Source of the DNA: Macrostomum lignano
Lineage: Eukaryota
Assembly: GCA_002269645.1 (NCBI GenBank)
Contig: NIVC01003500.1
Coordinates: 30,703 to 94,702 of the forward strand
Direction: 5' to 3'
Length of the DNA stretch: 64,000 bases
This document shows, in pieces, positions 43 through 53,850 of this stretch. The number at the start of each line of letters is the position of its first letter. Position 1 is the first letter of the stretch. The notes under the pieces were generated by a model, which saw only the letters and a program-made list of their open reading frames with translations, did no database searches and had not been told where the DNA came from. A program made the position numbers and the translations under genes.

Positions 43-2616
43 ATGGCTCGACTGAAGTTCCTGCTGCTTGAGGCTGCGGCGCTGCTGCTGCTGACTGCTT
101 GCTGCATCGCTCAGCAGCCTCCTCAGGCTGTGCCTCCATCTAGTGAGCAGGCTGCAGCGCAACAGCCCCCACCAACTCAGCATCACCAGCCTCCGCCCGA
201 GCATAATCAGCCTCCACCTGCCCATCAACAGCCCCCGCCTGACTACCAACAGCCACCGCCTGTCCACCAGCAGCAGCCGCCTGTCCACCAACAGCCACCG
301 CCTGTCCACCAGCAGCAGCCGCCTGTCCACCAACAGCCACCGCCTGTCCACCAGCAGCCGCCTGTCCACCAGCAGCAGCCGCCTGTCCACCAGCAGCCAC
401 CACCTGCCAACCAGCAGCAGCCGCCTGTCCAGCAGCAACCACCGCCTGCCCACCAGCAGCAGCCGCCTGTCCACCAGCAGCAGCAGCCACCACCTGTCCA
501 CCAACAGCTGCCGCCTGTCCAGCAGCAGCCACCACCCGTCCAGCAACAGCCACCGCCTGTCCACCAACAGCAGCCGCCTGTCCAGCAACAGCCACCGCCT
601 GTCCACCAACAGCCTCCAGAGCAGCAGCAGCAGCAGCAGTACCAGCCTCCACCCGAGCATCATCAGCCACCTCACCCGGAGACACAAGAATCCGTTTCTA
701 CCCATCATCGGCAGCCACCGCCGCCGCCGCCGCGGGATTCCCGCGACAGGCCGGACGATGGCCATCAAGGAGGCAAGCGGGTGCCCTCTGTGCTGCTGCC
801 ATCGGAGCCTAACGAATTCGACATGCGGTCCATCTCGTTTGTGTACCGCCTGCCCAGCCGGGGGAAGCAGTGCTTTTATCATAAGGCATCTAGCAACTTC
901 ACCTTTGAGTATCAGGTAAGAAGATTGGATTATATGTATTTGTGGCCTAAATTGTTTGTGTTTGTGTATTTTGCAGCTACGTTTTGGGTAGGTTTGTGTA
1001 CTAGCTCGAAGGGCTGTGCAGGTTTGCGTGGGCGTGTGTACTCTAAGGCCATGCAGGTTTGCGTGGGCGTGTGTACTCTAAGGCCGTGCAGGTTTGCGTG
1101 GGTGTGTGTACTCTAAGGCCGTGCAGGTTTGGGTGGGTGTGTGTACTCTAATGCCGTGTTGGTTGCGTGGGTGTGTGTATTTCAGTGCTACTTAAGCTTC
1201 CTGGACATGTGTAACTGTAAGGCCATGCATAATTGCCTAGCCGTGTGTGACTTTAAGTCCCTGCTGGCCTGTCTGATCGTGTGTACTCTAATATTATTCA
1301 AGTTTGCACGGGCGTTTCTTACTTTAAACCTGTTTGTTTGGGTTTGCACGGGTGTGTGCTTTATATATTTCTCGTAGATGTTGTGTAGACGTGCGCAATT
1401 TAAGGCCGTGTAGTTTTGCGTGGGCGTTTTAATGCATTATAACCGCTGTAAGCTGCAATAACCAAGCCGGCCCTGCCCTGTACATTCCAACACTCGCCCA
1501 GGTGACAAGCGGCGGCAGTTTGGACATTGACGTCTTCATCAATTCGCCAGGCGGCAAGCTGGCGTTCGATCGGCGCGGCAAAGCCTACGGCGAGGCGAGT
1601 TTTGCATTCGACCCGGCCAAATCGACTGCCGACATGCGCCTGCCGGCCTACATGATCTGCCTGGACAACCGGTACTCTTCCTGGCACGACAAGCTCGTGT
1701 ACTTTAACATCGATGTCGAACAGGGCCGCGAAGGCCTCCGGCCTGGCGCCGATCAGCTGTCCGAGGGACTGCGGACCAGTCTCCGCGAGATGGAGCTTTC
1801 CTGGGAGGAGTTTTACGTAAGTGGCTGCCAAATTGGTGTACATTGGTGTATGCACATTGGTGTGTGAACATTGGTGTATGTACATTTGTGTGTGTAAATT
1901 GTTGTATGTACATTGGTGTGTGTACATTTGTGTATGTATACTGGTGTGTGTATATTAGTGTACTTACACTGGTATGTGTGTACATTGGTGTGTGTACATT
2001 TGTGTATGTATACTGGTGTGTGTATATTAGTGTACTTACACTGGAATGTGTGTACATTGGTGTGTGTACATTGTTGTGTGTACATTGGTGTATGTACATT
2101 GATTTGCGTACATTGGTGAATGTACATTGGTGTATGTACACTGGTGTCTGTACATTGGTGTGTGTGTGCATTGGTGTATGTACATTGATTTGCGTATATT
2201 GTTGTATGTACACTGGTGTCTGTACATTGGTGTGTGTGTGTGCATTGGTGTATGTACATTGATGAATGTACATTGGTGTGTTTGTTTGTAAATTTCTGTA
2301 CATGTATTTACAGTAGCTGGATGTGAGTACTCCATCAGCTGTTTCGAATAACTATAACCCCCCCCCCCCGCCGCAGAAATCCACGGACAAGGTGGAGGAC
2401 CACCTGCTGCGCACCATCTACTTGCTGAGCAAGAGCCGCAACAACGAGGCCCGCGATCGCATGATGATGGACGCGAACAATGCCCGGGTGAGCACCTGGT
2501 CCATCTTCCAGCTGGTGGTGATGCTGTTCGTGTCCGGCATCCAGGTGATGATGATCCGCTCCCTGTTCGACGACAAGTCCCGCCTGCACCGGGTGTGGAA
2601 GGCGGGAAAGTCTTAG
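43..2616 (+). CDS. p24/emp24/gp25L (TMED, gamma-subfamily-like) cargo receptor with long N-terminal Pro/Gln/His-rich luminal insert; 3 exons, ~475 aa
   Basis: Exons 43-915, 1502-1816, 2377-2616, with GT-AG introns and phase 0/0. Signal peptide MARLKFLLLEAAALLLLTACCIA. GOLD domain (LPSRGKQCFYH..FTFEYQ|VTSGGSLDIDVFINSPGGK..YMICLDNRYSSWHDKLVYFNI), then coiled coil, TM (WSIFQLVVMLFVSGIQVMMIRSLF) and short tail with FD and basic residues. Specific paralog (TMED1/5-like) not resolved. Confidence 0.9.
1015..1175. repeat. 35-bp minisatellite in TMED intron 1
   Basis: Unit GGTTTGCGTGGGCGTGTGTACTCTAAGGCCGTGCA recurs at 1021, 1056, 1091, 1126. Confidence 0.85.
1830..2285. repeat. Degenerate TG-rich minisatellite (GTGTGTACATTG-type) in TMED intron 2
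   Basis: Repeated TGTACATTGGTGTG motifs. They produce the spurious HTPMY/VCTLV ORFs. Confidence 0.85.
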
Positions 2617-5569: not shown

Positions 5570-6770
5570 TAGCTCCATAGCAACGGGGTAATTTGACTTG
5601 AACACTATCTTAAAGCTCCATAGCAACGGGGTAATTTAACACTATCTTAAAGCGCCATAGCAACGGGGTAATTTGACTTGAACACTATCTTAAAGCTCCA
5701 TAGCAACGGGGTAATTTGATTTAAACACTATCTTAAAGCTCCATAGCAACGGGGTAATTTGACTTGAACACTATCTTAAAGCTCCATAGCAACGGGGTAA
5801 TTTGATTTAAACACTATCTTAAAGCTCCATAGCAACGGGGTAATTTGATTTAAACACTATCTTAAAGCTCCATAGCAACGGGGTAATTTGACTTGAACAC
5901 TATCTTAAAGCTCCATAGCAACGGGGTAATTTAACACTATCTTAAAGCGCCATAGCAACGGGGTAATTTGACTTGAACACTATCTTAAAGCTCCATAGCA
6001 ACGGGGTAATTTGATTTAAACACTATCTTAAAGCTCCATAGCAACGGGGTAATTTGACACTATCTTAAAGCTCCATAGCAACGGGGTAATTTGACTTGAA
6101 CACTATCTTAAAGCTCCATAGCAACGGGGTAATTTGATTTAAACACTATCTTAAAGCTCCATAGCAACGGGGTAATTTGATTTAAACACTATCTTAAAGC
6201 TCCATAGCAACGGGGTAATTTGATTTGAACACTATCTTAAAGCTCCATAGCAACGGGGTAATTTGATTTAAACACTGTCTTAAAGCTCCATAGCAACGGG
6301 GTAATTTGATTTAAACACTATCTTAAAGCTCCATAGCAACGGGGTAATTTGACTTGAACAGTGTCTCAGAGCTCCATAGCAACGGGGTAATTTGATTTAA
6401 ACACTATCTTAAAGCTCCATAGCAACGGGGTAATTTGATTTAAACACTATCTTAAAGCTCCATAGCAACGGGGTAATTTGATTTGAACACTATCTTAAAG
6501 CTCCATAGCAACGGGGTAATTTGATTTAAACACTGTCTTAAAGCTCCATAGCAACGGGGTAATTTGATTTAAACACTATCTTAAAGCTCCATAGCAACGG
6601 GGTAATTTGACTTGAACAGTGTCTCAGAGCTCCATAGCAACGGGGTAATTTGATTTAAACACTATCTTAAAGCTCCATAGCAACGGGGTAATTTGATTTA
6701 AACAGTGTCTCAGAGCTCCATAGCAACGGGGTAATTTGACTTGAACAGTGTCTCAGAGCTCCATAGCAAC
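5570..6770. repeat. 43-bp minisatellite (with shorter variants) upstream of SPATA20
   Basis: GCTCCATAGCAACGGGGTAATTTGATTTAAACACTATCTTAAA, about 28 copies. Confidence 0.95.
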
Positions 6771-12365: not shown

Positions 12366-13129
12366 CAAAAATTTGCCCTCTCGCAAAAAATCACATTTTC
12401 AAGCATCGCCCCATTAAGTAGTTTAGGGCGTCCATGATCTTTTTTAATGGTTTTGATTTCATTTTTATAATCCAATTGAAATTTTTTTCATTTTTTATTT
12501 AACCCCTTCCCACGTCATTATAATCATATTTATTCATTTTTTGTTGTTTTCTCTCTTTTTTTAGTTTAATGCATCGTGTTTCCATCTTTCTGTGACTGTA
12601 TATAGAAACTAAGACCGATAAAAATTCATAATTACATTGAGCTCTGCCACTCGGATCATCTTCTCAAGTTAAATTACTTTCGCGTTCATTTTCTCAACTT
12701 CTTTAAAATATGTTTTGCGTTTCGGTGACTTATGTACAATTTATTTAACAGCTACTTTAAGTAGGCAGGCACTGTAGTCAGTACTTAACTGCAATAGTAG
12801 TGGCTCTGGTTTATCAGTGATTAGAACAAGTTAGTGAACCCTAAATGAATTTCTATCAGCACTAGTGAATTATTCTTAAGGAGTGATTAGTGAAGTGAGT
12901 GATTACGTAACTTTTCTGTAAAAAAATATTGCATAGTTTAGACACAATTGGCCACAAAGCAAAACAGCTGTTGAAAAAGTTAGTGAACCCATTTGAAATT
13001 CCAGCAACTAATGCTCTGTACTCGTAATTCCATCCATAGCAGCAATAACAGCCTGCAATACATTTTTGTGACTGTTAATCAATTTACAGCACTGCTCTCC
13101 AGGAATCTTTCCCATTCTACAGTGCAAAA

Positions 13130-14128
13130 CCTCTCCAACTCATTCAGAATCTCTCCAACTCATCCAGAACCTCTCCAACTCATTCAGAATCTCTCCAACT
13201 CACCCAGAACCTCTCCAACTCATTCAGAACCTCTCCAACTCACCCAGAATCTCTCCAACTCATTCAGAATCTCTCCAACTCACCCAGAATCTCTCCAGCT
13301 CATTCAGAATCTCTCCAACTCACCCAGAACCTCTCCAACTCATTCAGAACCTCTCCAACTCACCCAGAACCTCTCCAACTCATCCAGAACCTCTCCAACT
13401 CACCCAGAACCTCTCCAACTCATTCAGAACCTCTCCAACTCATCCATGACCTCTCCAACTCACCCAGAACCTCTCCAACTCATCCATGACCTCTCCAACT
13501 CATTCAGAACCTCTCCAACTCACCCAGAACCTCTCCAACTCACCCAGAACCTCTCCAACTCATTCAGAACCTCTCCAACTCATTCAGAACCTCTCCAACT
13601 CACCCAGAACCTCTCCAACTCATTCAGAATCTCTCCAACTCATCCATGACCTCTCCAACTCATTCAGAATCTCTCCAACTCACCCAGAATCTCTCCAACT
13701 CATTCAGAATCTCTCCAACTCATCCAGAACCTCTCCAACTCATTCAGAACCTCTCCAACTCATTCATGACCTCTCCAACTCATTCAGAACCTCTCCAACT
13801 CATTCAGAACCTCTCCAACTCATTCAGAACCTCTCCAACTCACCCAGAACCTCTCCAACTCATTCAGAATCTCTCCAACTCACCCAGAACCTCTCCAACT
13901 CATTCAGAACCTCTCCAACTCATTCAGAATCTCTCCAACTCATTCAGAACCTCTCCAACTCATTCAGAACCTCTCCAACTCATTCAGAACCTCTCCAACT
14001 CACCCAGAACCTCTCCAACTCATTCAGAACCTCTCCAACTCATTCAGAACCTCTCCAACTCATTCAGAACCTCTCCAACTCATTCAGAACCTCTCCAACT
14101 CACCCAGAACCTCTCCAACTCATTCAGT
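13130..14128. repeat. 20-bp minisatellite
   Basis: CTCTCCAACTCATTCAGAAC/T, about 50 copies, with CACC/CATT/CATCCATGAC variants. Confidence 0.95.
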
Positions 14129-14944: not shown

Positions 14945-16375
14945 CAACTGTGAGCTGCAGTCAGGGTGTCTCTGGTTTATCAGTGAGCTGCAGTCAGGGT
15001 GTCTCTGGTTTATCAGTGAGCTGCAGTCAGGGTGTCTCTGGTTTATCAGTGAGCTGCAGTCAGGGTGTCTCTGGTTTATCAGTGAGCTGCAGTCAGGGTG
15101 TCTCTGGTTTATCAGTGAGCTGCAGTCAGGGTGTCTCTGGTTTATCAGTGAGCTGCAGTCTGAGTGTCTCTGGTTTATCAGTGAGCTGCAGTCAGGGTGT
15201 CTCTGGTTTATCAGTGAGCTGCAGTCAGGGTGTCTCTGGTTTATCAGTGAGCTGCAGTCTGAGTGTCTCTGGTTTATCAGTGAGCTGCAGTCAGGGTGTC
15301 TCTGGTTTATCAGTGAGCTGCAGTCAGGGTGTCTCTGGTTTATCAGTGAGCTGCAGTCAGGGTGTCTCTGGTTTATCAGTGAGCTGCAGTCTGAGTGTCT
15401 CTGGTTTATCAGTGAGCTGCAGTCAGGGTGTCTCTGGTTTATCAGTGAGCTGCAGTCTGAGTGTCTCTGGTTTATCAGTGAGCTGCAGTCTGAGTGTCTC
15501 TGGTTTATCAGTGAGCTGCAGTCAGGGTGTCTCTGGTTTATCAGTGAGCTGCAGTCTGAGTGTCTCTGGTTTATCAGTGAGCTGCAGTCAGGGTGTCTCT
15601 GGTTTATCAGTGAGCTGCAGTCTGAGTGTCTCTGGTTTATCAGTGAGCTGCAGTCAGGGTGTCTCTGGTTTATCAGTGAGCTGCAGTCAGGGTGTCTCTG
15701 GTTTATCAGTGAGCTGCAGTCTGAGTGTCTCTGGTTTATCAGTGAGCTGCAGTCAGGGTGTCTCTGGTTTATCAGTGAGCTGCAGTCAGGGTGTCTCTGG
15801 TTTATCGGTGAGCTGCAGTCAGGGTGTCTCTGGTTTATCAGTGAGCTGCAGTCAGGGTGTCTCTGGTTTATCGGTGAGCTGCAGTCAGGGTGTCTCTGGT
15901 TTATCAGTGAGCTGCAGTCTGAGTGTCTCTGGTTTATCAGTGAGCTGCAGTCTTAAGAGTCTCTGGTTTATCAGTGAGCTGCAGTCTTAAGAGTCTCTGG
16001 TTTATCAGTGAGCTGCAGTCTTAAGAGTCTCTGGTTTATCAGTGAGCTGCAGTCAGGGTGTCTCTGGTTTATCAGTGAGCTGCAGTCTTAAGAGTCTCTG
16101 GTTTATCAGTGAGCTGCAGTCTTAAGAGTCTCTGGTTTATCAGTGAGCTGCAGTCTTAAGAGTCTCTGGTTTATCAGTGAGCTGCAGTCTTAAGAGTCTC
16201 TGGTTTATCAGTGAGCTGCAGTCTTAAGAGTCTCTGGTTTATCAGTGAGCTGCAGTCTTAAGAGTCTCTGGTTTATCAGTGAGCTGCAGTCTTAAGAGTC
16301 TCTGGTTTATCAGTGAGCTGCAGTCAGGGTGTCTCTGGTTTATCAGTGAGCTGCAGTCTTAAGAGTCTCTGGTTT
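14945..16375. repeat. 33-bp minisatellite directly abutting the GatC reading frame
   Basis: CAGTGAGCTGCAGTCAGGGTGTCTCTGGTTTAT, about 43 copies. Variants CAGGGTG, CTGAGTG and, only after ~15950, CTTAAGAG. Confidence 0.96.
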
Positions 16376-16380
16376 ATCTC

Positions 16381-17457: not shown

Positions 17458-17540
17458 CGACAGGGCAAATACCCGCACGAGTACTTGCTGAACCAGCCCT
17501 CGCTCGCTGCGGTCAGCCGCGAATGGGGAGCCAGACTGGC

Positions 17541-17611
<71 letters not shown>

Positions 17612-18502
17612 TAGACAGACAGACAGACAGACAGAAAGACACTAACACAGACAGACTGACAGACAGACAGAAAGACGGAAAGACAGACAGACAGACAGAC
17701 AGCCTTGCTTCTATTCGTCACGATTCTGATTCCCACAGCCGCCAGTCCCCATCAGTGCCCACCGGCCCCTAGCCGGGATTCGAGTCCTGGACCTCACCCG
17801 GGTGCTTGCCGGGCCCTACTGCTCAATGATCCTGGGCGATATGGGCGCAGATGTTATCAAGGTGGAGCGGCCGGGCGGCGGGGACGAGACCCGGCAGTGG
17901 GGGCCGCCGTTCGCGGCCGAGGACTCCGTGTACTTCCTGAGTGTCAACCGCAACAAGCGCAGCGTCTGCCTGGACTTCGGCCAACCGGCCGGGGCCGACC
18001 TGGTCCGCCGGCTGTCCCGGCGCTGCGACGTCCTGCTGGAGAACTTCGTGCCCGGCAAGCTGGCGAAGCGCGGGCTGGACTTTGCCTCGCTGAGCGCCCA
18101 GAATCCCGGCCTCATCTACTGCAGCATCTCCGGCTTCGGCCAGTCCGGGCCGTGGCGCCGGCGGGCCGGCTACGACGTCGCCGCGGCTGCCATCGGCGGC
18201 TTCCTCGGCATCACCGGCGAGCCCGACGGTCCGCCCGTCCGGGCCGGGGTGGCCGTCACGGACCTGTCCACCGGCCTGTATGCCCTGTCCGCCATCCTGG
18301 CCGCCCTGTACCGGCGGCGGACGGCCGAGAGTCTGGGGGAGGTCGGCCGGGGCTGCTGGATCGACGCCAACCTGCTGGACACCCAGGTGGCCACAATGTC
18401 GCATGTGGCTGCCAGCTTCCTGCACACCGGTTAGGGGCTCAGAGTCTGTCTGTCTGTCTGTCCGTCTGTCTGCCTGTCTGTCTGTCTGTCTGTCTGTCGG
18501 CC

Positions 18503-18542
<40 letters not shown>

Positions 18543-18629
18543 AGCCTGTCAGTCAGCCTGTCTTAGTGTCTGTCTGTCTGCCCTGCCCTGTCTGTCTGTC
18601 TGTCTTGTCTGTCTGTCTGTCTGTCTTAG

Positions 18630-18664
<35 letters not shown>

Positions 18665-19342
18665 GTCTGTCTGTCAGCCTGTCTGTCTGTCTGTCTTAGT
18701 GTCTGTCTGTCTGCCTGTCTGCCTGTCTGTCTGTCTGTCTTAGTGTCTGTCTGTCTGCCTGTCTGTCCATCACAGAACCCACTGACCCTCGCAGGCCAGG
18801 AGCCGAGCCGCTGGGGCACAGGGCACGCCAACCTCGCGCCCTACCAGGCCTTCGATACCAGCGACCGCCGCCAACTCATCCTGGGCGCCGGCAACGACCG
18901 CCAATTCGGCGTCCTCTGCCGCCGGCTCGGCGCTCCCCACCTAGCAACGGATCCTCGCTTCCTTAGCAACCGGCTGCGGGTTGCTAACCGGACGAGCCTG
19001 ATCCCGCTGATTCAGGCCCTGGTGCGCGCCCGGCCGCTGGCGGATTGGCTGGCGACGCTGGAGGGCTCCGACCTGCCGTACGGCCCGGTGAACACTGTGG
19101 CGGAGGCCCTGGCCAGCCCGCCGGTGGCAGATCCGGCCAGTGGCCTGCTGGTCACCTGCGAACACCCGGCGGCCGGCCGGGTCACCGCTCCGGGTCCCGC
19201 TGTCCGTTTTGACGGCCGGCGCGGTGAAGTGACGCGGCCGCCGCCCAGGCTGGGTGAGCACACTGACGAGGTGCTCGGCGAGCTGCTGGACTGCGGCTGC
19301 GAGGAGCTGCTGGAGCTGCGGCGGGGGAAAGTGATCGCCTGA
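17458..19342 (+). CDS. SUGCT: CoA-transferase family III (CaiB/BaiF), succinyl-CoA:glutarate CoA-transferase-like; first exon uncertain
   Basis: Firm exons 17739-18429 and 18795-19342 (phase 1 intron). Motifs PLAGIRVLDLTRVLAGPYCSMILGDMGADVIKVERPG.GDETR.WGPPF, NRNKRSV, DVLLENF, LIYCSISGFGQSGP, GYD..A, G|QEPSRWGTGHANLAPYQAF, PPRLGEHT. Candidate upstream exon 17458-17511 (TTTAG acceptor, G|GTCAGC donor, phase 0) has no ATG. Confidence 0.9.
17538..17702. repeat. (GACA)n microsatellite upstream of SUGCT exon 17739-18429
   Basis: Direct reading of CAGACAGACAGA... Confidence 0.95.
18443..18768. repeat. (TCTG)n microsatellite in the SUGCT intron
   Basis: Direct reading of TCTGTCTGTCTG...; reverse complement of the upstream (GACA)n tract. 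Confidence 0.95.
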
Positions 19343-21855: not shown

Positions 21856-23230
21856 ATCTTATGTTACCGTGGCGCTGGAGACCCCATTGGGCGGCGTCAA
21901 CCCTCCGTCTATAGCGACGCGTCGGCCGTTTAGGGATAAGCGGATCGGGGCGCCCACGCCTTCCTGCCATGCAGCTTGAAGTCAAAGTAAGTCAAGCATG
22001 GTATACCGTGGCCTTAGCGCCAGTTTCAGCCTGTATTTTGTGTTGACTTTGTCCGTGCGTGGGGGAATTGCGATATTGAACTTATTGCCGCTGACGCTGA
22101 GTTTATAGCAGAGCTCTCCCTTTCAATCCTAAACTCTCAATTATCTTTATTTCTCCCACTCTATATCTTTCTCATCACTGCGCTTGTGTCTATCTATTGG
22201 TCTCTCATGCACACAAAAGTATCTTTAGACCTCGAGTTGGGAACTTCAGAAAAGCTCCGTGAAGTTGAGCAACTATTGAACCCTGCGATAGGCATAATCT
22301 GGGCCGCAGTCTGCCGGTGCACGCGAGCATACTGCTGCAAATTGTTGCGCTTTCCAGAGTGACAGCGGCTCACTGTATAATAGGCCAAAGGCAAGGCAAG
22401 TGGCTACATGCTTTCCCCGCCTGCAGGCTTCTCCTGGTCAAAGCCTGCGGGCTCGCGAGTCTGCCTTGGAAAAAAGAAAGGAACTGGGAGAAGCTTTGAA
22501 TTCTCTCTGCTTTTGTAACTGAAACTTTAGGACTGCAAAAGCTAAATTCAAGAGTCAGGTCGTCTCCTGGCAACACAGGTGAGCTACACCTTTATTCCCT
22601 TTGCCGAGTGGGAACTCCTCCCATGGTGCAAGCAGGTGTTCTTTGTTTTCAACTTCAAAGATAAGGGCCTAGCCCAAGATTCAGGACAGCAGCAGTAAGT
22701 CAGGCAGCCTGCTGCTTAGTGTTACAGTTTCTCATGTGCTAGTGCACAGTTCATGCATCCCAGTCTGTACGACATCTTCGTAATGCATTCGCGAACTTAT
22801 AAGCTTGCGAGTAGTTAGTCTCGCATCAAAACCGTACTTGTAGTGGCTTCAGTGTCACCTTTTTTCAATTCATACATGCAACCAAAACACACCGACAAAC
22901 TGAAGCCACTTCATATAATAAGGATTAAATATGCATTAGAGCATTAATCCGGTTATTAACCAAGCCAAGACATAGGCACAGCCTCTGAGCCCCATCAGCG
23001 CCGCGATTCGCCAGAACCGCGACCGCCAATGCCCAGTCACTTGGTCTCCAGGAGAGGCCTGCGCGCACCAACTACTGATGCTCTCCTGTCACAGATCCGT
23101 GCAGACAAAAAGCATCGGCTGCTATAGAAATTTTGCGCTTCTATCGCAATTTCTCAAAATCGATTTGAGCAGAGGCCAACCGACAACCATCAGCACTTCG
23201 TCCAATTTTCCACTGCGAAGTGAAGACCTG

Positions 23231-23728
23231 ATGCGGCTGTGCAGAGTGGTTTTCAGCAGCGAGTGCCTGCTGTGCGCGCTGCTCGTTGCTGCGCTCGCCT
23301 CGTGCGGCAGCTGCAGAGGTCAGCAAGAGGTCAAGGCCGCCGTAGACGGAGAGGCTTCGCACAGCCAAGAGCATGGTGGGCTCCAAGAGAAGCGGTTCAA
23401 CGGCGGAATGTTCGGCAAGCGGTTCAACGGCGGAATGTTCGGCAAGCGGTTCAACGGCGGAATGTTCGGCAAGCGGTTCAACGGCGGAATGTTCGGCAAG
23501 CGGTTCAACGGCGGAATGTTCGGCAAGCGGTTCAACGGCGGAATGTTCGGCAAGCGATTCAACGGCGGAATGTTCGGCAAGCGGTTCAACGGCGGAATGT
23601 TCGGCAAGCGGTTCAATGGAGGAATGTTCGGCAAGCGGTTCAACGGTGGAATGTTCGGCAAACGCTTTAATGGAGGAATGTTCGGCAAGCGGTTCAACGG
23701 CGAAATGTTCGGCAAGCGTTCAAGATAA
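23231..23728 (+). CDS. Prepro-neuropeptide encoding 11x FNGGMF-amide and 1x FNGEMF-amide; single exon, 165 aa
   Basis: ATG at 23231, hydrophobic signal peptide (CLLCALLVAALASCGSCRG), acidic spacer, then 12 x 27-nt units (23396-23719) of KR-FNGGMF-G-KR. Dibasic cleavage sites and amidation glycines are established neuropeptide hallmarks. Between-copy substitutions are almost all synonymous. Confidence 0.92.
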   Translation: MRLCRVVFSSECLLCALLVAALASCGSCRGQQEVKAAVDGEASHSQEHGGLQEKRFNGGMFGKRFNGGMFGKRFNGGMFGKRFNGGMFGKRFNGGMFGKRFNGGMFGKRFNGGMFGKRFNGGMFGKRFNGGMFGKRFNGGMFGKRFNGGMFGKRFNGEMFGKRSR

Positions 23729-36473: not shown

Positions 36474-36581
36474 GTCAGCTGGGCTGAGATTGACAGCAAA
36501 TGGGGAATTGGGAATTGCAGGGCGAACTGGCAGCGCTGGGGTGCAGCCTCTGCAATGCGGGGTGGCAGCTGGCAATGACTC

Positions 36582-39010
36582 TCAGCTAGATGTGCCTGAC
36601 TCTGCTAGATGTGCCTGACTCTCTGCTAGATGTGCCTGACTCTCTGCTTGATCTGTCTGACTCTCTGCTAGATGTGTCTGACTCTGCTAGATGTGCCTAA
36701 CTCTCTGCTAGATGTGTCTGACTCTCTGCTAGATGTGCCTGACTCTGCTAGATGTGCCTGACTCTGCTAGATGTGCCTGACTCTGCTAGATGTGCCTGAC
36801 TCTGCTAGATGTGCCTGACTCTGCTAGATGTGCCTGACTCTCTGCTTGATCTGTCTGACTCTCTGCTAGATGTGTCTGACTCTCTGCTAGATCTGTCTGA
36901 CTCTGCTAGATGTGCCTGACTCTCTGATAGATGTGCCTGACTCTGCTAGATGTGCCTGACTCTCTGATAGATGTGCCTGACTCTGATAGATGTGTCTGAC
37001 TCTCTGCTAGATCTGTCTGACTCTGCTAGATGTGCCTGACTCTGCTAGATGTGCCTGACTCTCTGCTAGATGTGCCTGACTCTCTGCTAGATGTGCCTGA
37101 CTCTGCTAGATGTGCCTGACTCTCTGCTAGATGTGCCTGACTCTGCTAGATGTGCCTGACTCTCTGCTAGATGTGCCTGACTCTCTGCTAGATGTGCCTG
37201 ACCCTCTACTAGATCTGTCTGACTCTCTGCTAGATGTGCCTGACCCTCTGCTAGATCTGTCTGACTCTCTGCTAGATCTGCCTGACTCTCTGCTAGATGT
37301 GCCTGACTCTCTGCTAGATGTGCCTGACTCTCTGCTAGATGTGCCTGACTCTGCTAGATGTGCCTGACTCTCTGATAGATGTGCCTGACTCTCTGCTAGA
37401 TGTGTCTGACTCTCTGCTAGATGTGCCTGATTCTGCTAGATGTGCCTGACTCGCTGCTTGATCTGTCTGACTCTCTGCTAGATGTGTATGACTCTCTGCA
37501 AGATCTGTCTGTCTCTGCTAGATGTGCCTGACTCTCTGATAGATGTGCCTGACTCTCTGCTTGATCTGTCTGACTCTCTGCTAGATGTGCCTGACTCTGC
37601 TAGATGTGCCTGACTCTGCTAGATGTGCCTGACTCTCTGCTAGATCTGTCTGACTCTCTGCTAGATCTGCCTGACTCTCTGCTAGATCCGCCTGACTCTC
37701 TGCTAGATGTGCCTGACTCTCTGCTAGATGTGCCTGACTCTCTGCTAGATGTGCCTGACTCTGCTAGATGTGCCTGACTCTGCTAGATGTGCCTGACTCT
37801 GCTAGATGTGCCTGACTCTGCTAGATGTGCCTGACTCTCTGCTTGATCTGTCTGACTCTCTGCTAGATGTGCCTGACTCTCTGCTAGATGTTCCTGACTC
37901 TGCTAGATGTGCCTGACTCTGCTAGATGTGCCTGACTCTGCTAGATGTGCCTGACTCTGCTAGATGTGCCTGACTCTCTGCTAGATGTGCCTGACTCTCT
38001 GCTAGATGTGCCTGACTCTGCTAGATGTGCCTGACTCTCTGCTAGATGTGCCTGACTCTCTGCTAGATGTGCCTGACTCTCTGCTAGACCTGCCTGACTC
38101 TGCTAGATCTGCCTGACTCTCTGCTAGACCTGCCTGACTCTGCTAGATCTGCTTGACTCTCTGCTAGATGCTAGATGTGCCTGACTCTGCTAGATCTATC
38201 TGACTCTGCTAGATCTGTCTGACTCTCTGCTAGATGTGCCTGACTCTCTGCTAGATGTTCCTGACTCTGCTAGATGTGCCTGACTCTGCTAGATGTGCCT
38301 GACTCTGCTAGATGTGCCTGACTCTGCTAGATGTGCCTGACTCTGCTAGATGTGCCTGACTCTCTGCTAGATGTGCCTGACTCTCTGCTAGATGTGCCTG
38401 ACTCTGCTAGATGTGCCTGACTCTCTGCTAGATGTGCCTGACTCTCTGCTAGATGTGCCTGACTCTCTGCTAGACCTGCCTGACTCTGCTAGATCTGCCT
38501 GACTCTCTGCTAGACCTGCCTGACTCTGCTAGATCTGCCTGACTCTCTGCTAGATGCTAGATGTGCCTGACTCTGCTAGATCTATCTGACTCTGCTAGAT
38601 CTGTCTGACTCTGCTAGATCTGCCTGAATCTCTGCTAGATCTGCCTGACTCTGCTAGATCTGCCTGAATCTCTACTAGATCTGCCTGACTCTGCTAGATG
38701 TGCCTGAATCTCTGCTAGATCTGTCTGACTCTGCTAGATCTGCCTGAATCTCTGCTAGATCTGCCTGAATCTCTGCTAGATCTGTCTGACTCTGCTAGAT
38801 GTGCCTGAATCTCTGCTAAATCTGTTTGACTCTGCCAGATCTGCCTGAATCTCTGCTAGATCTGCCTGACTCTGCTAGATCTGCCTGAATCTCTGCTAGA
38901 TCTGCCTGAATCTCTGCTAGATCTGCCTGACTCTGCCAGATCTGCCTGAATCTCTGCTAGATCTGCCTGAATCTCTGCTAGATCTGCCTGAATCTCTGCT
39001 AGATCTGCCT
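36582..39010. repeat. 19/21-bp mixed minisatellite, ~2.4 kb, between the AP1AR-like and FGFR1OP2 genes
   Basis: CTAGATGTGCCTGACTCTG (19) and CTAGATGTGCCTGACTCTCTG (21), grading to GATCTGCCTGAATCTCT at the right end. Confidence 0.96.
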
Positions 39011-39529
39011 GACAAAAATCTGACAAAAAAGCAAAATGAGAAGTCAATATCACATTACGCAATAAACATGATGTTTCAACTGGCCAGTCAGTCAGCACCC
39101 GTACTTTTTCAGTGGACTTTTTCAACCTCGAGCAGACCGGAACTGGACAGCTGCAGAAGACATCAGACTCGCATTAATAATTCATTAAATTCTCTCTGGA
39201 TGATAATTTAAAAAGGACAAAATTTTGACTAGACAGACAGGCAATGAGTTATGGCGCACAAGCTGCAGTGTTATGCATACATATATTATACTGTAGTAAT
39301 AATTAATACCACAGCTAAGCAACCGCATTGAGTTACAATAGAGTTAAATATTTCAAATACTGACAGAGCAGCAAAGGACGCACAATACTCGGAGTAAAGG
39401 TTTGAAAAAAGACAATTGCAGGCCAATTAATATTTGTATATTAATAATAGGTCTGCATAATGAACAAATAAAAATTAAACATTCTAGACTAGAAACTCAA
39501 GACTGCGTCCAGCTGTCACTCCACAGAGC

Positions 39530-42500
39530 TCACAGCTCCGCCGGCTCAAGCGGGAGCCGTATCGGCCGTCGGCCGCCGCCAAAACTTGCCGCCGCGTTAG
39601 CCGGCGCGGAAGCCGCCAAGGAGCCACCGCGGCCGCCGAAGCCGCCGGTATCGAACTCGTGGCTCCACTCCAGCTCGTCCGCCTCGGCCGGTAGCAGCAG
39701 CTGCTCGCCAGGGGCCTCCGCCAGCGAGCCGCTCAGGCCGGCCGCCTCCGCCGCCGTCTGGCCGGGGAACAGGTCGAAGTCCGCGGCCGCCTCCGCCGCC
39801 TCAGCGGCCTCCACCTCGGCCTCGGCCTCCCTGGCGAGGGCTCGGGCGGTCAGGTCCTCCTCGGTGGCCGAGCGGAGCATCAGGTTGGAGCGGCGCAGGC
39901 TGCTGAGCATCTCTGCGGGGATGAAGCAATGTGTCCGTGATTCTGGAGCGATAATCATCAGTGATTCTATGGCGATAATCATCAGTGATTCTATGGCGAT
40001 AATCATCAGTGATTCTAGGGCGATAATCATCAGTGATTCTAGGGCGATAATCATAACTGATTCTAAGGTGATAATCATCAGTGATTCTAGGGCGATAATC
40101 ATAACTGATTCTAGGGCGATAATCATCAGTGATTCTATGGCGATAATCATCACTGATTCTAAGGTGATAATCATCAGTGATTCTAGGGCGATAATCATAA
40201 CTGATTCTAGGGCGATAATCATCAGTGATTCTATGGCGATAATCATCACTGATTCTATGGTGATAATCATCAGTGATTCTAGGGCGATAATCATAACTGA
40301 TTCTATGGCGATAATCATCACTGATTCTATGGTGATAATCATCACTGATTCTATGGTGATAATCATCAGTGATTCTAGGGCGATAATCATAACTGATTCT
40401 ATGGCGATAATCATCACTGATTCTATGGTGATAATCATCACTGATTCTATGGCGATAATCATCACTGATTCTATGGTGATAATCATCAGTGATTCTAGGG
40501 CGATAATCATAACTGATTCTATGGCGATAATCATCACTGATTCTATGGTGATAATCATCACTGATTCTATGGTGATAATCATCACTGATTCTATGGTGAT
40601 AATCATCAGTGATTCTAGGGCGATAATCATAACTGATTCTATGGCGATAATCATCACTGATTCTATGGTGATAATCATCACTGATTCTATGGTGATAATC
40701 ATCAGTGATTCTAGGGCGATAATCATAACTGATTCTATGGCGATAATCATAACTGATTCTATGGCGATAATCATCACTGATTCTATGGTGATAATCATCA
40801 CTGATTCTATGGCGATAATCATCACTGATTCTATGGTGATAATCATCAGTGATTCTAGGGCGATAATCATAACTGATTCTATGGCGATAATCATCACTGA
40901 TTCTATGGTGATAATCATCACTGATTCTATGGTGATAATCATCAGTGATTCTAGGGCGATAATCATAACTGATTCTATGGCGATAATCATAACTGATTCT
41001 ATGGTGATAATCATCACTGATTCTATGGTGATAATCATCAGTGATTCTAGGGCGATAATCATAACTGATTCTATGGCGATAATCATCACTGATTCTATGG
41101 TGATAATCATCACTGATTCTATGGTGATAATCATCAGTGATTCTAGGGCGATAATCATAACTGATTCTATGGCGATAATCATAACTGATTCTATGGTGAT
41201 AATCATCACTGATTCTATGGTGATAATCATCAGTGATTCTATGGCGATAATCATCACTGATTCTATGGTGATAATCATTAGTGATTCTCTAGGGTTTCAA
41301 ATCGCGGAGGGATGAGGCGATAAGTAGAAGGCAAACTCACCAGGCTCGTGGTCCCAGTCCAGGTCCAGCGAGCGCCTCTCGTCGCTATCAGCTGAAGCGG
41401 GTTGAATTGAAATGCGCCAGTTTCATTTAATCAGCCACACAGCAGGTAGTTAAGGTAAACAGAGCAGTTGCTAAGCAGACCAGCTGAATGAGCTCACTGG
41501 GACTCAGCTGACCGGCAGCTGAACTGCCGCGCAGTCGGGCCTCGGATCCGACTCTCTGCTGCTGCTGCAGGCGCTGTTGCCATGGAAACCGCTGCTCATT
41601 GCCGCCGCCAATCAGTGGACGGACCGAGGCGGCCACTTCGTCTGTCGCGGAGACGGCCGGGTCGAAGCTGCCTTCGACTCTGAGGGCCTCCTCCTGGTCG
41701 GACAGCTGGCGGGTGGGTAAGCGATGACGGAAGTAGATTTGCAGGGAGGCTGGCTGCCCAGCAACGGAGGATCTGGAAGACTGGCCAAGCAACTGGGGAT
41801 CTGGGAGGCTGGTCCGGCAACTGGGGATCTGGGAGGCTAGAACCCAGCAACTGAGGATCTGGGAGGCTGGCCCAGCAACTGAGGATCAGGGAGGCTGGCC
41901 AAGCAACTGAAGATCTGGGAGGCTGGCACAGCAACTGGGGATTTGGGAGGCTGGCCCAGAAACTGAGAATTTAAAAGGCTGTCTGCCCAACAACCGAGGT
42001 TCTGAGAGGGTGGCCCAGGTTATTGGAGTGGCAGGCAAACAGTTAATCTGAATAAAGCAAAATCACAGCCAAAGATTTGATTAAAAGAAAACAAAATACA
42101 AAACGGCAACACTGATAACGAAAATTAAAAACAAATCAACACAGAAGATGAAAACCAGAGTTGCAAGCAAAACCAACTCAGCCTTCACTGACCGGTGAAA
42201 ATAAATCACAGAACCTCTACTGAAAACCCCGAATCCGCTAGCAAAGGAGGATGATTGGGGATGGCGAAATCGGTAGGGCAGGGGGAGAAGCAGGGCTCAG
42301 AAGCCGGAGCCACCTTGTAGAACTCGTGTACGAATCGGCGGCTGCCGCAGCGCCTTCCAGACCAGCCCTCAAAAGACTGGTCGTCGGAGTCGCAGTGGCT
42401 GCCAACACTACTGCAAGTAGCAGCAGCCGCAGCGGCGGCTGAGGAGCCCCCAGAGGCGGCCGCAACGCTGCTCGGCGGCAGCGCCGTGGAGCGAAGGTTA

Positions 42501-52375: not shown

Positions 52376-52799
52376 GTTTAACTCTCTGCCAAGTTTAAGT
52401 TTAGGGCAATATAATCTATCAAATAAAAAATTTCCTGCCACGAATACATGCGACAATTGGGAATTAAGCAATTTTAAGTCAAGTAGTTTTGTGTTCTGTA
52501 TGCAGAAATATGGGGATCCTTTTTATTATATCTTATTCTGTGGTGTACAAGATTGATGTTAAAGACTTCGTTTTATTTCTAACAAGCTTGCAGTTGAGTC
52601 CAGTGTACATGTACTTGTACTGTACATGTACTAAAGTACATAGTACAAAATTTGTAGGCTGTATTGTATTTTGAGCATGCTCATCGCTCGCAAAATTAGT
52701 AAAAAAAACATGCGACTGAGAAGACTGCACCGTTCCAGAAGTCTATAAAAGTGCAAAGAGCTACAATCTTTTTATTGGGCTGGGTTGCTACGGGGAGAT

Positions 52800-53850
52800 T
52801 AATACACTTTGGGGAGACTAATACACTTTGGGGAGACGAATACACTTTGGGGAGACAAATAAACTTTCGAGAGACTAATACACTTTAGGGAGACTAATAC
52901 ACTTTGGGGAGAATAATACACTTTGGGGAGACGAATACACTTTGGGGAGACAAATAAACTTTCGAGAGACTAATACACTTTAGGGAGACTAATACACTTT
53001 GGGGAGAATAATACACTTTCGAGAGACAAATATACTTGAGGGAGACTAATACACTTTAGGGAGACTAATACACTTTGGGGAGACTAATACACCTTGGGGA
53101 GACTAATACACTTTGGGGAGACTAATACACTTTCGAGAGACAAATACACTTTAGGGAGACTAATACACTTTGGGGAGACTAATACACCTTGGGGAGACTA
53201 ATACACTTTGGGGAGACTAATACACTTTGGGGAGACTAATACACTTTGGAAAGACTAATACACTTTGGGGAGAATAATACACTTTCGAGAGACAAATATA
53301 CTTGAGGGAGACTAATACACTTTAGGGAGACTAATACACTTTGGGGAGACTAATACACCTTGGGGAGACTAATACACTTTGGGGAGACTAATACACCTTG
53401 GGGAGACTAATACACTTTGGGGAGACTAATACACCTTGGGGAGACTAATACACTTTGGGGAGACTAATACACTTTGGGGAGACTAATACACTTTGGGGAG
53501 ACTAATACACCTTGGGGAGACTAATACACTTTGGGGAGACTAATACACTTTGGGGAGACTAATACACTTTGGGGAGACTAATACACTTTGGGGAGAATAA
53601 TACACTTTCGAGAGACAAATATACTTGAGGGAGACTAATACACTTTAGGGAGACTAATACACTTTGGGGAGACTAATACACCTTGGGGAGACTAATACAC
53701 TTTGGGGAGACTAATACACCTTGGGGAGACTAATACACTTTGGGGAGACTAATACACTTTCGAGAGACAAATACACTTTAGGGAGACTAATACACTTTGG
53801 GGAGACAAATACACTTTAGGGAGACTAATACACTTTGGGGAGACTAATAC
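52800..53850. repeat. 19-bp minisatellite with higher-order variants
   Basis: ACTAATACACTTTGGGGAG, about 55 copies. A variant block TTCGAGAGACAAATATACTTGAGGG recurs at ~53018, ~53286 and ~53606. Confidence 0.95.

What the first reader, a model, noticed from the sequence alone, without database searches (positions are those of the whole stretch)
23231..23728. Apparently undescribed amidated neuropeptide: 11x FNGGMFamide plus 1x FNGEMFamide
Seen: signal peptide, acidic spacer, then 12 units KR-FNGGMF-G-KR. Unlike the window's intronic minisatellites, differences between copies are nearly all silent (CGG/CGA/CGC, AAC/AAT, GGC/GGA/GGT, AAG/AAA, TTC/TTT), with one replacement (G to E in the last copy). 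This points to selection on the peptide. Established: dibasic sites plus Gly give prohormone-convertase cleavage and C-terminal amidation. I do not recognise FNGGMFamide as a named family; resemblance to fulicin-type FN…amide or other -MFamide/-Famide peptides is speculative.
Basis: partly seen in the sequence, partly recalled or inferred. Interest (0 to 1): 0.8.

Follow-up and report, generated by a model that had tools for sequence, protein, structure and literature searches.

The report
Flatworm SIFamide/NLP-10-like multi-copy neuropeptide gene
A single-exon gene in a Macrostomum flatworm genome encodes twelve tandem copies of the amidated hexapeptide FNGGMFamide, which is most likely the flatworm version of the known SIFamide/NLP-10 neuropeptides of arthropods and nematodes rather than a new peptide family.

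Summary
Window 23231-23728 (+) is a 165-aa ORF with a signal-peptide-like N-terminus, an acidic spacer, 11x KR-FNGGMF-G and 1x KR-FNGEMF-G, then KRSR-stop. Nine of ten nucleotide differences between units are silent third-position changes (P about 6e-6 to 5e-4). No other minisatellite in the window behaves this way. The window comes from a Macrostomum flatworm: a neighbouring CoA-transferase exon is 92% identical to M. lignano. M. lignano has the same peptide array (29-32 units in the genome), annotated only as 'hypothetical protein', with an unrelated-looking signal peptide and spacer. The 'unrecognised family' reading does not hold. FNGGMF-amide is identical to the C-terminus of the peptides in the Diploscapter pachys NLP-10 orthologue. 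It matches 5/6 with C. elegans NLP-10 (AIPFNGGMYamide) and 4/6 with arthropod SIFamide (…PFNGSIFamide). NLP-10 is the established NPFF/SIFamide-type ligand of NPR-35. The multi-copy precursor without a Cys tail resembles nematode NLP-10, not the arthropod or trochozoan SIFamide precursor. A cestode SIFamide homologue ('Attachin', Preza 2022) exists, but I could not read that paper. Verdict: a real neuropeptide gene and a new member of a known kind. Expression, processing and receptor remain untested.

The parts
23231..23728 (+). Complete single-exon coding sequence of the FNGGMFamide precursor (165 aa plus stop)
   Evidence: ORF and translation. The same uninterrupted ATG-to-array layout is found in M. 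lignano loci L001/L002.
23231..23320 (+). Signal-peptide-like N-terminus MRLCRVVFSSECLLCALLVAALASCGSCRG (the exact cleavage site is not determined)
   Evidence: Hydropathy profile and -3/-1 small-residue candidates. No dedicated signal-peptide predictor was available. The M. lignano orthologue also starts directly with a signal-peptide-like segment, which favours ATG 23231 over the upstream in-frame ATG at 23078.
23321..23389 (+). Acidic spacer QQEVKAAVDGEASHSQEHGGLQE
   Evidence: Composition is 5 D/E and 1 K/R. It is not conserved with M. lignano.
23390..23713 (+). Twelve 27-bp units, each encoding KR-FNGGMF-G (dibasic site, hexapeptide, amide-donor Gly)
   Evidence: TRF, unit table, 9 silent to 1 replacement differences, and about 94% DNA identity to the M. 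lignano array.
23687..23713 (+). Variant last unit encoding KR-FNGEMF-G (GGA>GAA at peptide position 4)
   Evidence: Position 4 is also the variable one in M. lignano (FNGVMF) and across the family (G in nematodes, S in SIFamide, I in IMFamide).
23714..23728 (+). Final dibasic site and short tail KRSR, then stop codon TAA (23726-23728)
23122..23128 (+). Tentative TATA-like element (CTATAGA) about 100 bp upstream of the ATG. It would place the transcription start downstream of the in-frame ATG at 23078.
   Evidence: Pattern match only. This is an inference, not tested. No canonical AATAAA lies within about 1 kb downstream.

Best explanation
This is a functional neuropeptide precursor gene of a Macrostomum flatworm. 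The pre-propeptide enters the secretory pathway through its N-terminal signal peptide. Prohormone convertases cut at each KR. A carboxypeptidase removes the basic residues, and peptidylglycine alpha-amidating enzymes convert the C-terminal Gly into an amide. One precursor yields 11 copies of FNGGMF-NH2 ([M+H]+ 671.297) and one FNGEMF-NH2 (743.318). The peptide is the flatworm representative of the SIFamide / NLP-10 (SIFP-1) branch of the bilaterian NPFF/SIFamide-type system. It is therefore predicted to act on a SIFamide-receptor/NPR-35-type GPCR as a neuromodulator. In other animals this system affects feeding, locomotion and arousal, and Attachin is reported to stimulate motility and attachment in tapeworms. 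Shown here: the gene structure, selection on the peptide, conservation in M. lignano, and motif identity with NLP-10 and SIFamide. Inferred: signal-peptide cleavage, processing, amidation, neuronal expression and receptor type.
For: (1) The precursor anatomy and the silent-substitution excess are confirmed. (2) The same peptide array is present in M. lignano, with 29-32 units per locus and at least 3 gene copies, while signal peptide, spacer and flanks are not alignable. This pattern of a conserved mature peptide and free pro-region is typical of neuropeptide precursors. (3) The window is from Macrostomum: its CoA-transferase exon is 92% identical to M. lignano A0A1I8HNM0. (4) An unbiased HMMER scan of 1.84 billion proteins found a Caenorhabditis NLP-10 orthologue using the window protein alone (P0269, E=1.3e-4). 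A profile search then retrieved the whole nematode NLP-10 family, including C. elegans F37A8.4 and 'CBR-NLP-10'. (5) Diploscapter pachys PAV77688.1 and PAV84654.1 encode ...PFNGGMF-GKR three times, a 6/6 match. They align colinearly with C. elegans NLP-10 at E=3e-19. C. elegans AIPFNGGMY-GKR matches 5/6 and arthropod FNGSIF-GKR 4/6, with conservative differences. I/M and F/Y swaps are described as common within the SIFamide/SMYamide/IMFamide group (bioRxiv 10.1101/2020.09.17.302331). (6) NLP-10 activates the NPFF/SIFamide-type receptor NPR-35 (PMC7615250; PMC11004728 section 3.11). (7) The multi-copy precursor without a Cys tail matches nematode NLP-10, which has 4-8 copies. (8) SIFamide-type receptors are reported as generally present in lophotrochozoans (PMC8557429), and a SIFamide homologue has been reported in cestodes (Preza et al. 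2022, cited in PMC11196405).
Against: The similarity rests on a six-residue core plus processing sites. Outside the repeat units nothing aligns with NLP-10 or SIFamide precursors. E-values for repeat proteins are inflated: unrelated Wamide and FVamide precursors scored better than NLP-10. Trochozoan SIFamide/FFamide peptides, from the phylogenetically nearer relatives, match only 1-2/6 and have a different precursor of 2 peptides plus a C-x6-C tail. The Pro that precedes the core in SIFamide and NLP-10 is absent here. No conserved gene order with the M. lignano loci was found. No transcription, peptide or receptor data were available. I could not see the sequence of cestode Attachin, so I cannot say whether it is the same gene family or whether Macrostomum has a separate canonical SIFamide gene.
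Confidence: 0.66

Rival explanations
1. It is a macrostomid-specific neuropeptide family that converged on the same hexapeptide core as NLP-10/SIFamide. It is processed in the same way but is not homologous and acts through a different, possibly flatworm-specific, receptor.
For: Only the 6-residue core is shared and no pro-region homology exists. The nearer trochozoan SIFamide/FFamide peptides are dissimilar. Two very large protein searches found no other flatworm carrier. The same string even occurs in bacterial-looking repeat proteins, which shows it can arise independently.
Against: A 6/6 and 5/6 ungapped match, including the amidated aromatic C-terminus, to a family with the same multi-copy design is unlikely by chance. 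The variable position within Macrostomum (position 4) is the same one that varies across the SIFamide/NLP-10 family.
Confidence: 0.2
2. It is a derived allatostatin-A/buccalin-type peptide. The spiralian form is F-x-G-G-L-amide in multi-copy precursors, and this one would have gained an extra C-terminal Phe.
For: The nemertean AST-A precursor carries ...RFNGGL-GKR in many copies (PMC8557429 supplement). FNGGL against FNGGM is 4/5 with a conservative L/M change. UniRef even names one NLP-10 orthologue 'Allatostatin' (P0285).
Against: The match requires a one-residue offset that changes the C-terminal amidated residue, which is the key determinant in this family (G-L/I-amide). That motif test fails. 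The ungapped match to NLP-10/SIFamide is better.
Confidence: 0.05
3. It is a secreted, processed peptide that is not neuronal, for example a gland product, antimicrobial peptide or pheromone that uses the same convertase and amidation machinery.
For: No expression data were obtainable. The very high copy number (12-32) suggests bulk production. Macrostomum has many secretory gland types.
Against: A hexapeptide with no charge or amphipathicity is an unlikely antimicrobial. The design and motif match a known neuropeptide family.
Confidence: 0.06
4. It is a member of the fulicin or SALMFamide families.
For: It shares the N-terminal F-N with fulicin (FNEFVamide, from my own knowledge) and FN...(M/T)Famide with starfish S1/S2.
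Against: The SALMFamide pattern S?[LF]?FG quoted in PMC5947262 is not met. An S2 antibody did not stain M. lignano (PMC5947262). Fulicin is a pentapeptide ending in Val-amide.
Confidence: 0.02
5. It is a non-coding minisatellite that happens to be open in frame.
For: The window is full of minisatellites, and all + frames are open across the array.
Against: There are 9 silent to 1 replacement differences. A signal peptide lies in frame. The peptide is conserved in another species while flanks diverge. Other minisatellites lack this pattern.
Confidence: 0.01

Closest known systems
Nematode NLP-10 (SIFP-1) precursors, e.g. C. elegans F37A8.4 (NP_497795.1) and Diploscapter pachys PAV84654.1
   Same: The C-terminal core is identical or nearly identical: FNGGMF-amide in Diploscapter, FNGGMY- and FSGGMY-amide in C. 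elegans. Each unit is Gly plus dibasic. The design is multi-copy with a signal peptide and an acidic pro-region, and there is no Cys-containing tail.
   Different: Nematode peptides are 9-11 residues with an x-x-Pro extension before the core, are separated by variable spacers, and number 4-8 per precursor. Here bare hexapeptides are packed back-to-back, 12 per precursor (29-32 units in M. lignano). There is no pro-region similarity. The phylum is different.
Arthropod SIFamide (AYRKPPFNGSIFamide) and its paralogues SMYamide and IMFamide
   Same: The core is F-N-G-x-(I/M)-F-amide, a 4/6 identity with conservative changes elsewhere, and the G-KR processing site is the same.
   Different: The arthropod precursor has one 12-residue peptide immediately after the signal peptide, then a conserved tail with C-x6-C. 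None of that is present here.
Trochozoan SIFamide/FFamide (Platynereis, Lineus, Lottia and others)
   Same: It is an amidated ...(L/F)F C-terminus assigned to the same bilaterian NPFF/SIFamide system (PMC8557429).
   Different: It matches only 1-2/6 and has two different peptides plus a C-x6-C tail. The Macrostomum peptide looks more ecdysozoan than trochozoan.
Cestode 'Attachin', reported as a SIFamide homologue (Preza et al. 2022, J Neurochem 162:467)
   Same: It is a flatworm peptide assigned to the SIFamide family, so it is the most likely in-phylum relative.
   Different: Unknown. The paper is not held in the library and I could not see the sequence or whether Macrostomum was included.
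Allatostatin-A/buccalin-type peptides (e.g. nemertean ...RFNGGLamide)
   Same: It shares the F-N-G-G-(L/M) string and has multi-copy precursors.
   Different: It ends in Gly-Leu-amide. The Macrostomum peptide has an additional C-terminal Phe, so the amidated residue differs.

Membership tests
SIFamide / NLP-10 (NPFF/SIFamide-type) peptides | C-terminal core [F/L/M]-[N/S]-G-[G/S/I]-[I/M/L/V/F]-[F/Y]-amide | tested here: met
   FNGGMF fits without gaps: 6/6 to Diploscapter NLP-10, 5/6 to C. elegans NLP-10-1 and 4/6 to arthropod SIFamide. The FNGEMF variant departs at the family's variable position 4.
SIFamide / NLP-10 (NPFF/SIFamide-type) peptides | Gly amide donor followed by a dibasic cleavage site, on a precursor with an N-terminal signal peptide | tested here: met
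   G-KR follows every unit. The signal-peptide-like N-terminus was judged by hydropathy and the -3/-1 rule only.
SIFamide / NLP-10 (NPFF/SIFamide-type) peptides | N-terminal extension with Pro immediately before the core (…PPFNGSIF, …IPFNGGMY) | tested here: not met
   KR directly precedes Phe1 in all 12 units.
SIFamide / NLP-10 (NPFF/SIFamide-type) peptides | Ligand of a SIFamide-receptor/NPR-35/NPFFR-type GPCR | not testable with these tools
   NLP-10 to NPR-35 was shown in C. elegans (PMC7615250). No receptor assay or Macrostomum receptor search was possible here.
SIFamide / NLP-10 (NPFF/SIFamide-type) peptides | Precursor homology outside the mature peptide | tested here: not met
   Only the repeat units align with NLP-10. 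This is usual for short-peptide precursors across phyla, so it weakens proof of orthology without excluding it.
Canonical SIFamide precursor (arthropod/trochozoan type) | One or two peptides directly after the signal peptide, plus a C-terminal associated peptide with a C-x6-C pair | tested here: not met
   There are 12 copies, a 5-residue tail (G-KRSR) and no Cys after the signal peptide.
NLP-10-type precursor (nematode) | Several copies of the core peptide, with no Cys-containing tail and the last unit at or near the C-terminus | tested here: met
   nematodes have 4-8 units and the window has 12. In both, the array runs to within a few residues of the stop.
Orthology with M. lignano Mlig004279 | Same peptide, same precursor layout and conserved neighbouring genes | tested here: inconclusive
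   The peptide and layout are the same. The neighbours (Usp, ATP-synthase D) are not found in the window.
Allatostatin-A / buccalin | C-terminus (Y/F)-x-F-G-(L/I)-amide or F-x-G-G-(L/I)-amide | tested here: not met
   The peptide ends in M-F-amide. It matches only with a one-residue offset.
SALMFamide | Pattern S-x-[L/F]-x-F-amide (as quoted in PMC5947262) and S2-antibody reactivity | tested here: not met
   The regex test was negative. M. lignano is not stained by the S2 antibody (PMC5947262).
Fulicin | Pentapeptide F-(D-Asn)-E-F-V-amide type with D-Asn at position 2 | tested here: not met
   The length (6 residues) and C-terminus (MF-amide) differ. D-amino-acid content is not testable from sequence. 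The fulicin sequence is from my own knowledge.
FMRFamide-like / RFamide peptides | C-terminal Arg-Phe-amide | tested here: not met
   The C-terminus is Met-Phe-amide.

The most novel reading that the evidence does not exclude
FNGGMFamide is not homologous to SIFamide/NLP-10 but is a macrostomid invention that converged on the same six residues. It would signal through a different, possibly flatworm-specific, orphan GPCR, which would make it a new peptide-receptor system in a regeneration model organism.
Probability: 0.18. Interest if true: 0.55.

Novelty: new member of a known kind. Interest (0 to 1): 0.35.

Why it matters
Macrostomum lignano is a genetic model for regeneration, stem cells and reproduction, yet this gene sits in its annotation as a truncated 'hypothetical protein'. 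Recognising it as a probable SIFamide/NLP-10-type precursor gives an immediately testable ligand for deorphanising the flatworm SIFamide/NPFF-type receptor. The related cestode peptide is reported to drive motility and attachment. It also bears on neuropeptide evolution. A spiralian peptide that is nearly identical to the ecdysozoan forms, and unlike the trochozoan FFamides, suggests that the ancestral protostome peptide had the FNG(G/S)(M/I)(F/Y)amide core and that the trochozoan form is derived. The 12 to about 30-fold tandem amplification, with perfect peptide conservation, is also a clean example of copy-number turnover under purifying selection.

Tried and rejected
- **Literature searches for the peptide:** FNGGMF, NGGMF, GGMFamide and Mlig004279 gave no relevant hit.
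- **Papers not held:** McVeigh 2009 (PMC2749192), McVeigh 2012 and Preza 2022. Their catalogues could not be checked.
- **Planarian prohormone catalogue** (Collins 2010, text and supplements): no similar peptide.
- **T. crassiceps npp supplements:** no text match.
- **Exact look-up of the window protein in public assemblies:** not on record.
- **Pfam:** no family for the precursor or for NLP-10.
- **Synteny with the M. lignano loci:** none.
- **DNA alignment of flanks with M. lignano:** only the repeat aligns.
- **Bacterial promoter/terminator scan**: irrelevant for a eukaryote and ignored.
- **High-scoring deep-search hits rejected as relatives:** Wamide (NPGIWGKR), FVamide (YQPMFVGKR), mollusc FMHGL repeats and others. 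They share only the G-K-R periodicity.
- **Metagenomic PRFNGGMF(T/E/D) repeat proteins rejected:** they lack Gly-dibasic sites and look bacterial.
- **SALMFamide, fulicin, RFamide and AST-A memberships:** considered and not met.
- **Upstream in-frame ATG at 23078:** rejected as the start because it would bury the signal peptide, and the M. lignano protein starts at the signal peptide.

Full report
**1. The observation**

Window 23231-23728 (+) is an uninterrupted 165-codon ORF. It reads MRLCRVVFSSECLLCALLVAALASCGSCRG (signal-peptide-like), then QQEVKAAVDGEASHSQEHGGLQE (acidic spacer), then twelve 27-bp units starting at 23390. Units 1-11 encode KR-FNGGMF-G and unit 12 encodes KR-FNGEMF-G, followed by KRSR and a stop. 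Tandem Repeats Finder reports the array at 23390-23723 with period 27, 12.4 copies and 94% matches.

Against the unit consensus there are ten nucleotide differences. Nine are silent third-position changes spread over five different codons, and one is a replacement (GGA>GAA, Gly to Glu, last unit). Only 17 of the 81 possible single substitutions in the unit are silent. The probability of at least 9 silent out of 10 is therefore 6e-6, or 1.3e-4 under a transition-only model, and 1.2e-4 if shared variants are collapsed to 8 alleles.

As a control I treated the window's other minisatellites with periods divisible by three in the same way. The ones that stay in register have silent:replacement ratios of 5:8, 10:16, 15:57 and 1:3 in their best open frame. 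None resembles this array. One caveat applies: all three forward frames are open across the array, so the ORF by itself proves nothing.

**2. Organism and context**

A neighbouring exon (17802-18434, Pfam CoA_transf_3) is 92% identical to a Macrostomum lignano CoA-transferase. The next best hits, from many phyla, are below 70%. The window therefore comes from a Macrostomum flatworm that is close to, but not identical with, the M. lignano reference. I could not tell which species.

The CoA-transferase ORF ends at 19342 and the next ORFs downstream lie on the minus strand from about 25970. The peptide gene therefore looks like a stand-alone, single-exon gene in an intergenic stretch. Other genes in the window are SPATA20-like/DUF255 and SIKE-family. 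Their introns are packed with minisatellites.

**3. The same gene in M. lignano**

The best database hit of the precursor is M. lignano 'hypothetical protein BOX15_Mlig004279g2' (P0001, 114 aa). It has a signal peptide, a spacer, 5x FNGGMF-GKR and a non-amidated tail FDGNMHPSFLDYITQNPTQD. There are at least three near-identical gene copies.

The genomic loci (L001, L002) tell a different story from the annotation. They carry 32 and 29 units respectively. The annotated 'intron' simply skips most of the array together with one or two single-base deletions in a run of five G (AACGGGGGAATG to AACGGGGAATG). This looks like a combination of a repeat-collapsed transcript model and long-read homopolymer errors, although a real truncating mutation is not excluded.

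Within the M. lignano arrays the peptide is again FNGGMF, with two FNGVMF units per locus. That is variation at the same position 4 that carries the Glu in the window.

Between species the unit consensus differs at one nucleotide only (GGC against GGT). The signal peptide, spacer and flanks cannot be aligned at the DNA level and barely at the protein level. A mature peptide held constant while everything else drifts is the classic signature of a neuropeptide precursor. Gene order is not conserved: the M. lignano neighbours (Usp, ATP synthase subunit d) are absent from the window.

**4. What family it belongs to**

An index-free HMMER scan of 1.84 billion representative proteins with the window protein returned mostly unrelated repeat proteins and other multi-copy precursors. 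These included Wamide, FVamide and mollusc FMHGL repeats, and they share only the G-K-R periodicity.

One hit was different. P0269 from Caenorhabditis auriculariae carries five ...PFSGG(M/I)Y-GKR units. A profile built from the window protein, P0001 and P0269 then retrieved about 40 nematode proteins with the same design. Among them were C. elegans F37A8.4 'Neuropeptide-Like Protein' (P0279: AIPFNGGMY-GKR, STMPFSGGMY-GKR, AAIPFSGGMY-GKR, GAMPFSGGMY-GR) and 'CBR-NLP-10'. This is the NLP-10 family.

One member, from Diploscapter pachys (PAV77688.1 and PAV84654.1), encodes ...LPFNGGMF-GKR...IPFNGGMF-GKR and ...MPFNGGMF-G. It aligns colinearly with C. elegans NLP-10 at E=3e-19. So the exact FNGGMF-amide C-terminus already exists inside the NLP-10 family.

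NLP-10 has been renamed SIFP-1. It is regarded as the nematode orthologue of protostome SIFamide and vertebrate NPFF, and it activates the NPFF/SIFamide-type receptor NPR-35/SIFR-1 (PMC7615250; PMC11004728, section 3.11 and its table).

Curated precursor sequences in the supplement of PMC8557429 show arthropod SIFamide as ...(R/K)KPPFNGSIF-GKR and Bombyx IMFamide as ...APMNGIMF-GKR. Ungapped identity of the last six residues to FNGGMF is as follows:

| Comparison peptide | Identity to FNGGMF |
|---|---|
| Diploscapter NLP-10 | 6/6 |
| C. elegans NLP-10-1 | 5/6 |
| Arthropod SIFamide | 4/6 |
| Bombyx IMFamide | 4/6 |
| Trochozoan SIFamide/FFamide (Platynereis, Lineus, Lottia) | 1-2/6 |

Veenstra notes that I/M and F/Y exchanges are ordinary within the SIFamide/SMYamide group (bioRxiv 10.1101/2020.09.17.302331).

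Precursor architecture also differs between groups:

| Group | Peptide copies | C-x6-C tail |
|---|---|---|
| Arthropods | 1 | yes |
| Trochozoans | 2 | yes |
| Nematodes | 4-8 | no |
| Macrostomum | 12 (window), about 30 (M. lignano) | no |

The gene thus works like, and most resembles, nematode NLP-10. It fails the precursor-architecture criteria of canonical SIFamide.

**5. Rivals**

- **Convergence.** The shared element is six residues. Nothing else aligns, the nearer trochozoan peptides differ, and the same string occurs in bacterial-looking repeat proteins. I give this about 0.2.
- **Allatostatin-A/buccalin.** A nemertean AST-A precursor carries ...RFNGGL-GKR. Aligning it needs a one-residue shift that changes the amidated residue, and the family motif is not met.
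- **SALMFamide.** The motif is not met, and an S2 antibody does not stain M. lignano (PMC5947262).
- **Fulicin and RFamide.** Not met.
- **A non-neuronal secreted peptide.** This cannot be excluded without expression data.
- **A chance ORF in a minisatellite.** This is effectively excluded.

**6. Mechanism**

Shown here are the reading frame, the processing-site grammar, purifying selection on the hexapeptide, conservation across two Macrostomum genomes, and motif identity with NLP-10 and SIFamide.

The following steps are inferred from established prohormone biology:
- co-translational signal-peptide removal;
- cleavage at KR by PC2/PC1-type convertases;
- trimming by a carboxypeptidase E-type enzyme;
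- amidation by PHM/PAL.

The predicted products are 11 FNGGMF-NH2 and 1 FNGEMF-NH2 per precursor, with masses given. Inferred from family membership: action on a SIFaR/NPR-35-type GPCR.

The identical DNA of units 1-6 and 8, the more diverged 3' units, and the 12 versus about 30 copy-number difference between species all indicate ongoing unequal exchange within the array.

**7. Novelty and limits**

The peptide string is absent from the 8.3 million searchable papers, and the M. lignano gene is unnamed. However, the family is known, and a SIFamide homologue ('Attachin') has been published for cestodes (Preza et al. 2022, cited in PMC11196405 and PMC10614006). I could not read that paper, nor McVeigh 2009, which mined M. 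lignano ESTs. Prior description of this very precursor therefore cannot be excluded.

I rate it a new member of a known kind, with modest interest (0.35). It is a useful annotation and a ready ligand for receptor deorphanisation in a model flatworm. It also carries a mildly interesting evolutionary message: the flatworm peptide looks ecdysozoan rather than trochozoan.

Noticed in passing
L001:10001-11045 and L002:10001-10965 (M. lignano GCA_002269645.1, NIVC01001722.1 / NIVC01000162.1): The annotated gene models (BOX15_Mlig004279g1/g2/g4, 5 peptide copies) under-represent the locus. The genome holds 32 and 29 repeat units. The 'intron' skips repeat units together with one or two 1-bp deletions in a GGGGG run. 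This is probably a collapsed-transcript model plus homopolymer assembly error, but a real truncation is possible.
   Followed up: partly
Proteins P0002-P0005, P0140, P0207, P0267, P0295 (metagenome contigs): These are small proteins with a signal-peptide-like start and repeats of (P/S)RFNGGMF(T/E/D). They carry the same hexapeptide string but have no Gly-dibasic sites. They look bacterial and are presumably a convergent low-complexity repeat of unknown function.
   Followed up: no
window 17532-17702 and 18444-18767: A (CAGA)n and a (GTCT)n microsatellite are reverse complements of each other. They bracket the CoA-transferase exon at 17802-18434 and could pair in the pre-mRNA.
   Followed up: no
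window 43-1116 (+): This ORF has a signal-peptide-like start followed by a long (QQPPPVH)n Pro/Gln-rich repeat over the minisatellite at 181-617. It has no Pfam match. It may be a secreted repeat protein or an exon merged with repeat read-through.
   Followed up: partly
window, whole (e.g. 5571-6770, 13128-14127, 14950-16378, 36576-39013, 39948-41288, 52792-53850): Minisatellite density is exceptional (67 TRF rows), with arrays of 20-120 copies of 19-51-bp units, mostly in the introns and intergenic DNA of ordinary housekeeping genes (SPATA20-like/DUF255, CoA_transf_3, SIKE).
   Followed up: partly
window 23390-23713 versus L001/L002 arrays: The consensus repeat unit differs between the two Macrostomum genomes at a single synonymous site (GGC against GGT), although the signal peptide, spacer and flanks are unalignable. 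Eight of nine codons use the same synonymous codon. This may reflect codon bias or constraint at the nucleotide level, and remains unexplained.
   Followed up: no
P0285 (Heligmosomoides polygyrus) and P0294 (Globodera pallida): UniRef names for clear NLP-10 orthologues are 'Allatostatin' and 'Cholecystokinin'. These look like automatic misnomers for this family.
   Followed up: no
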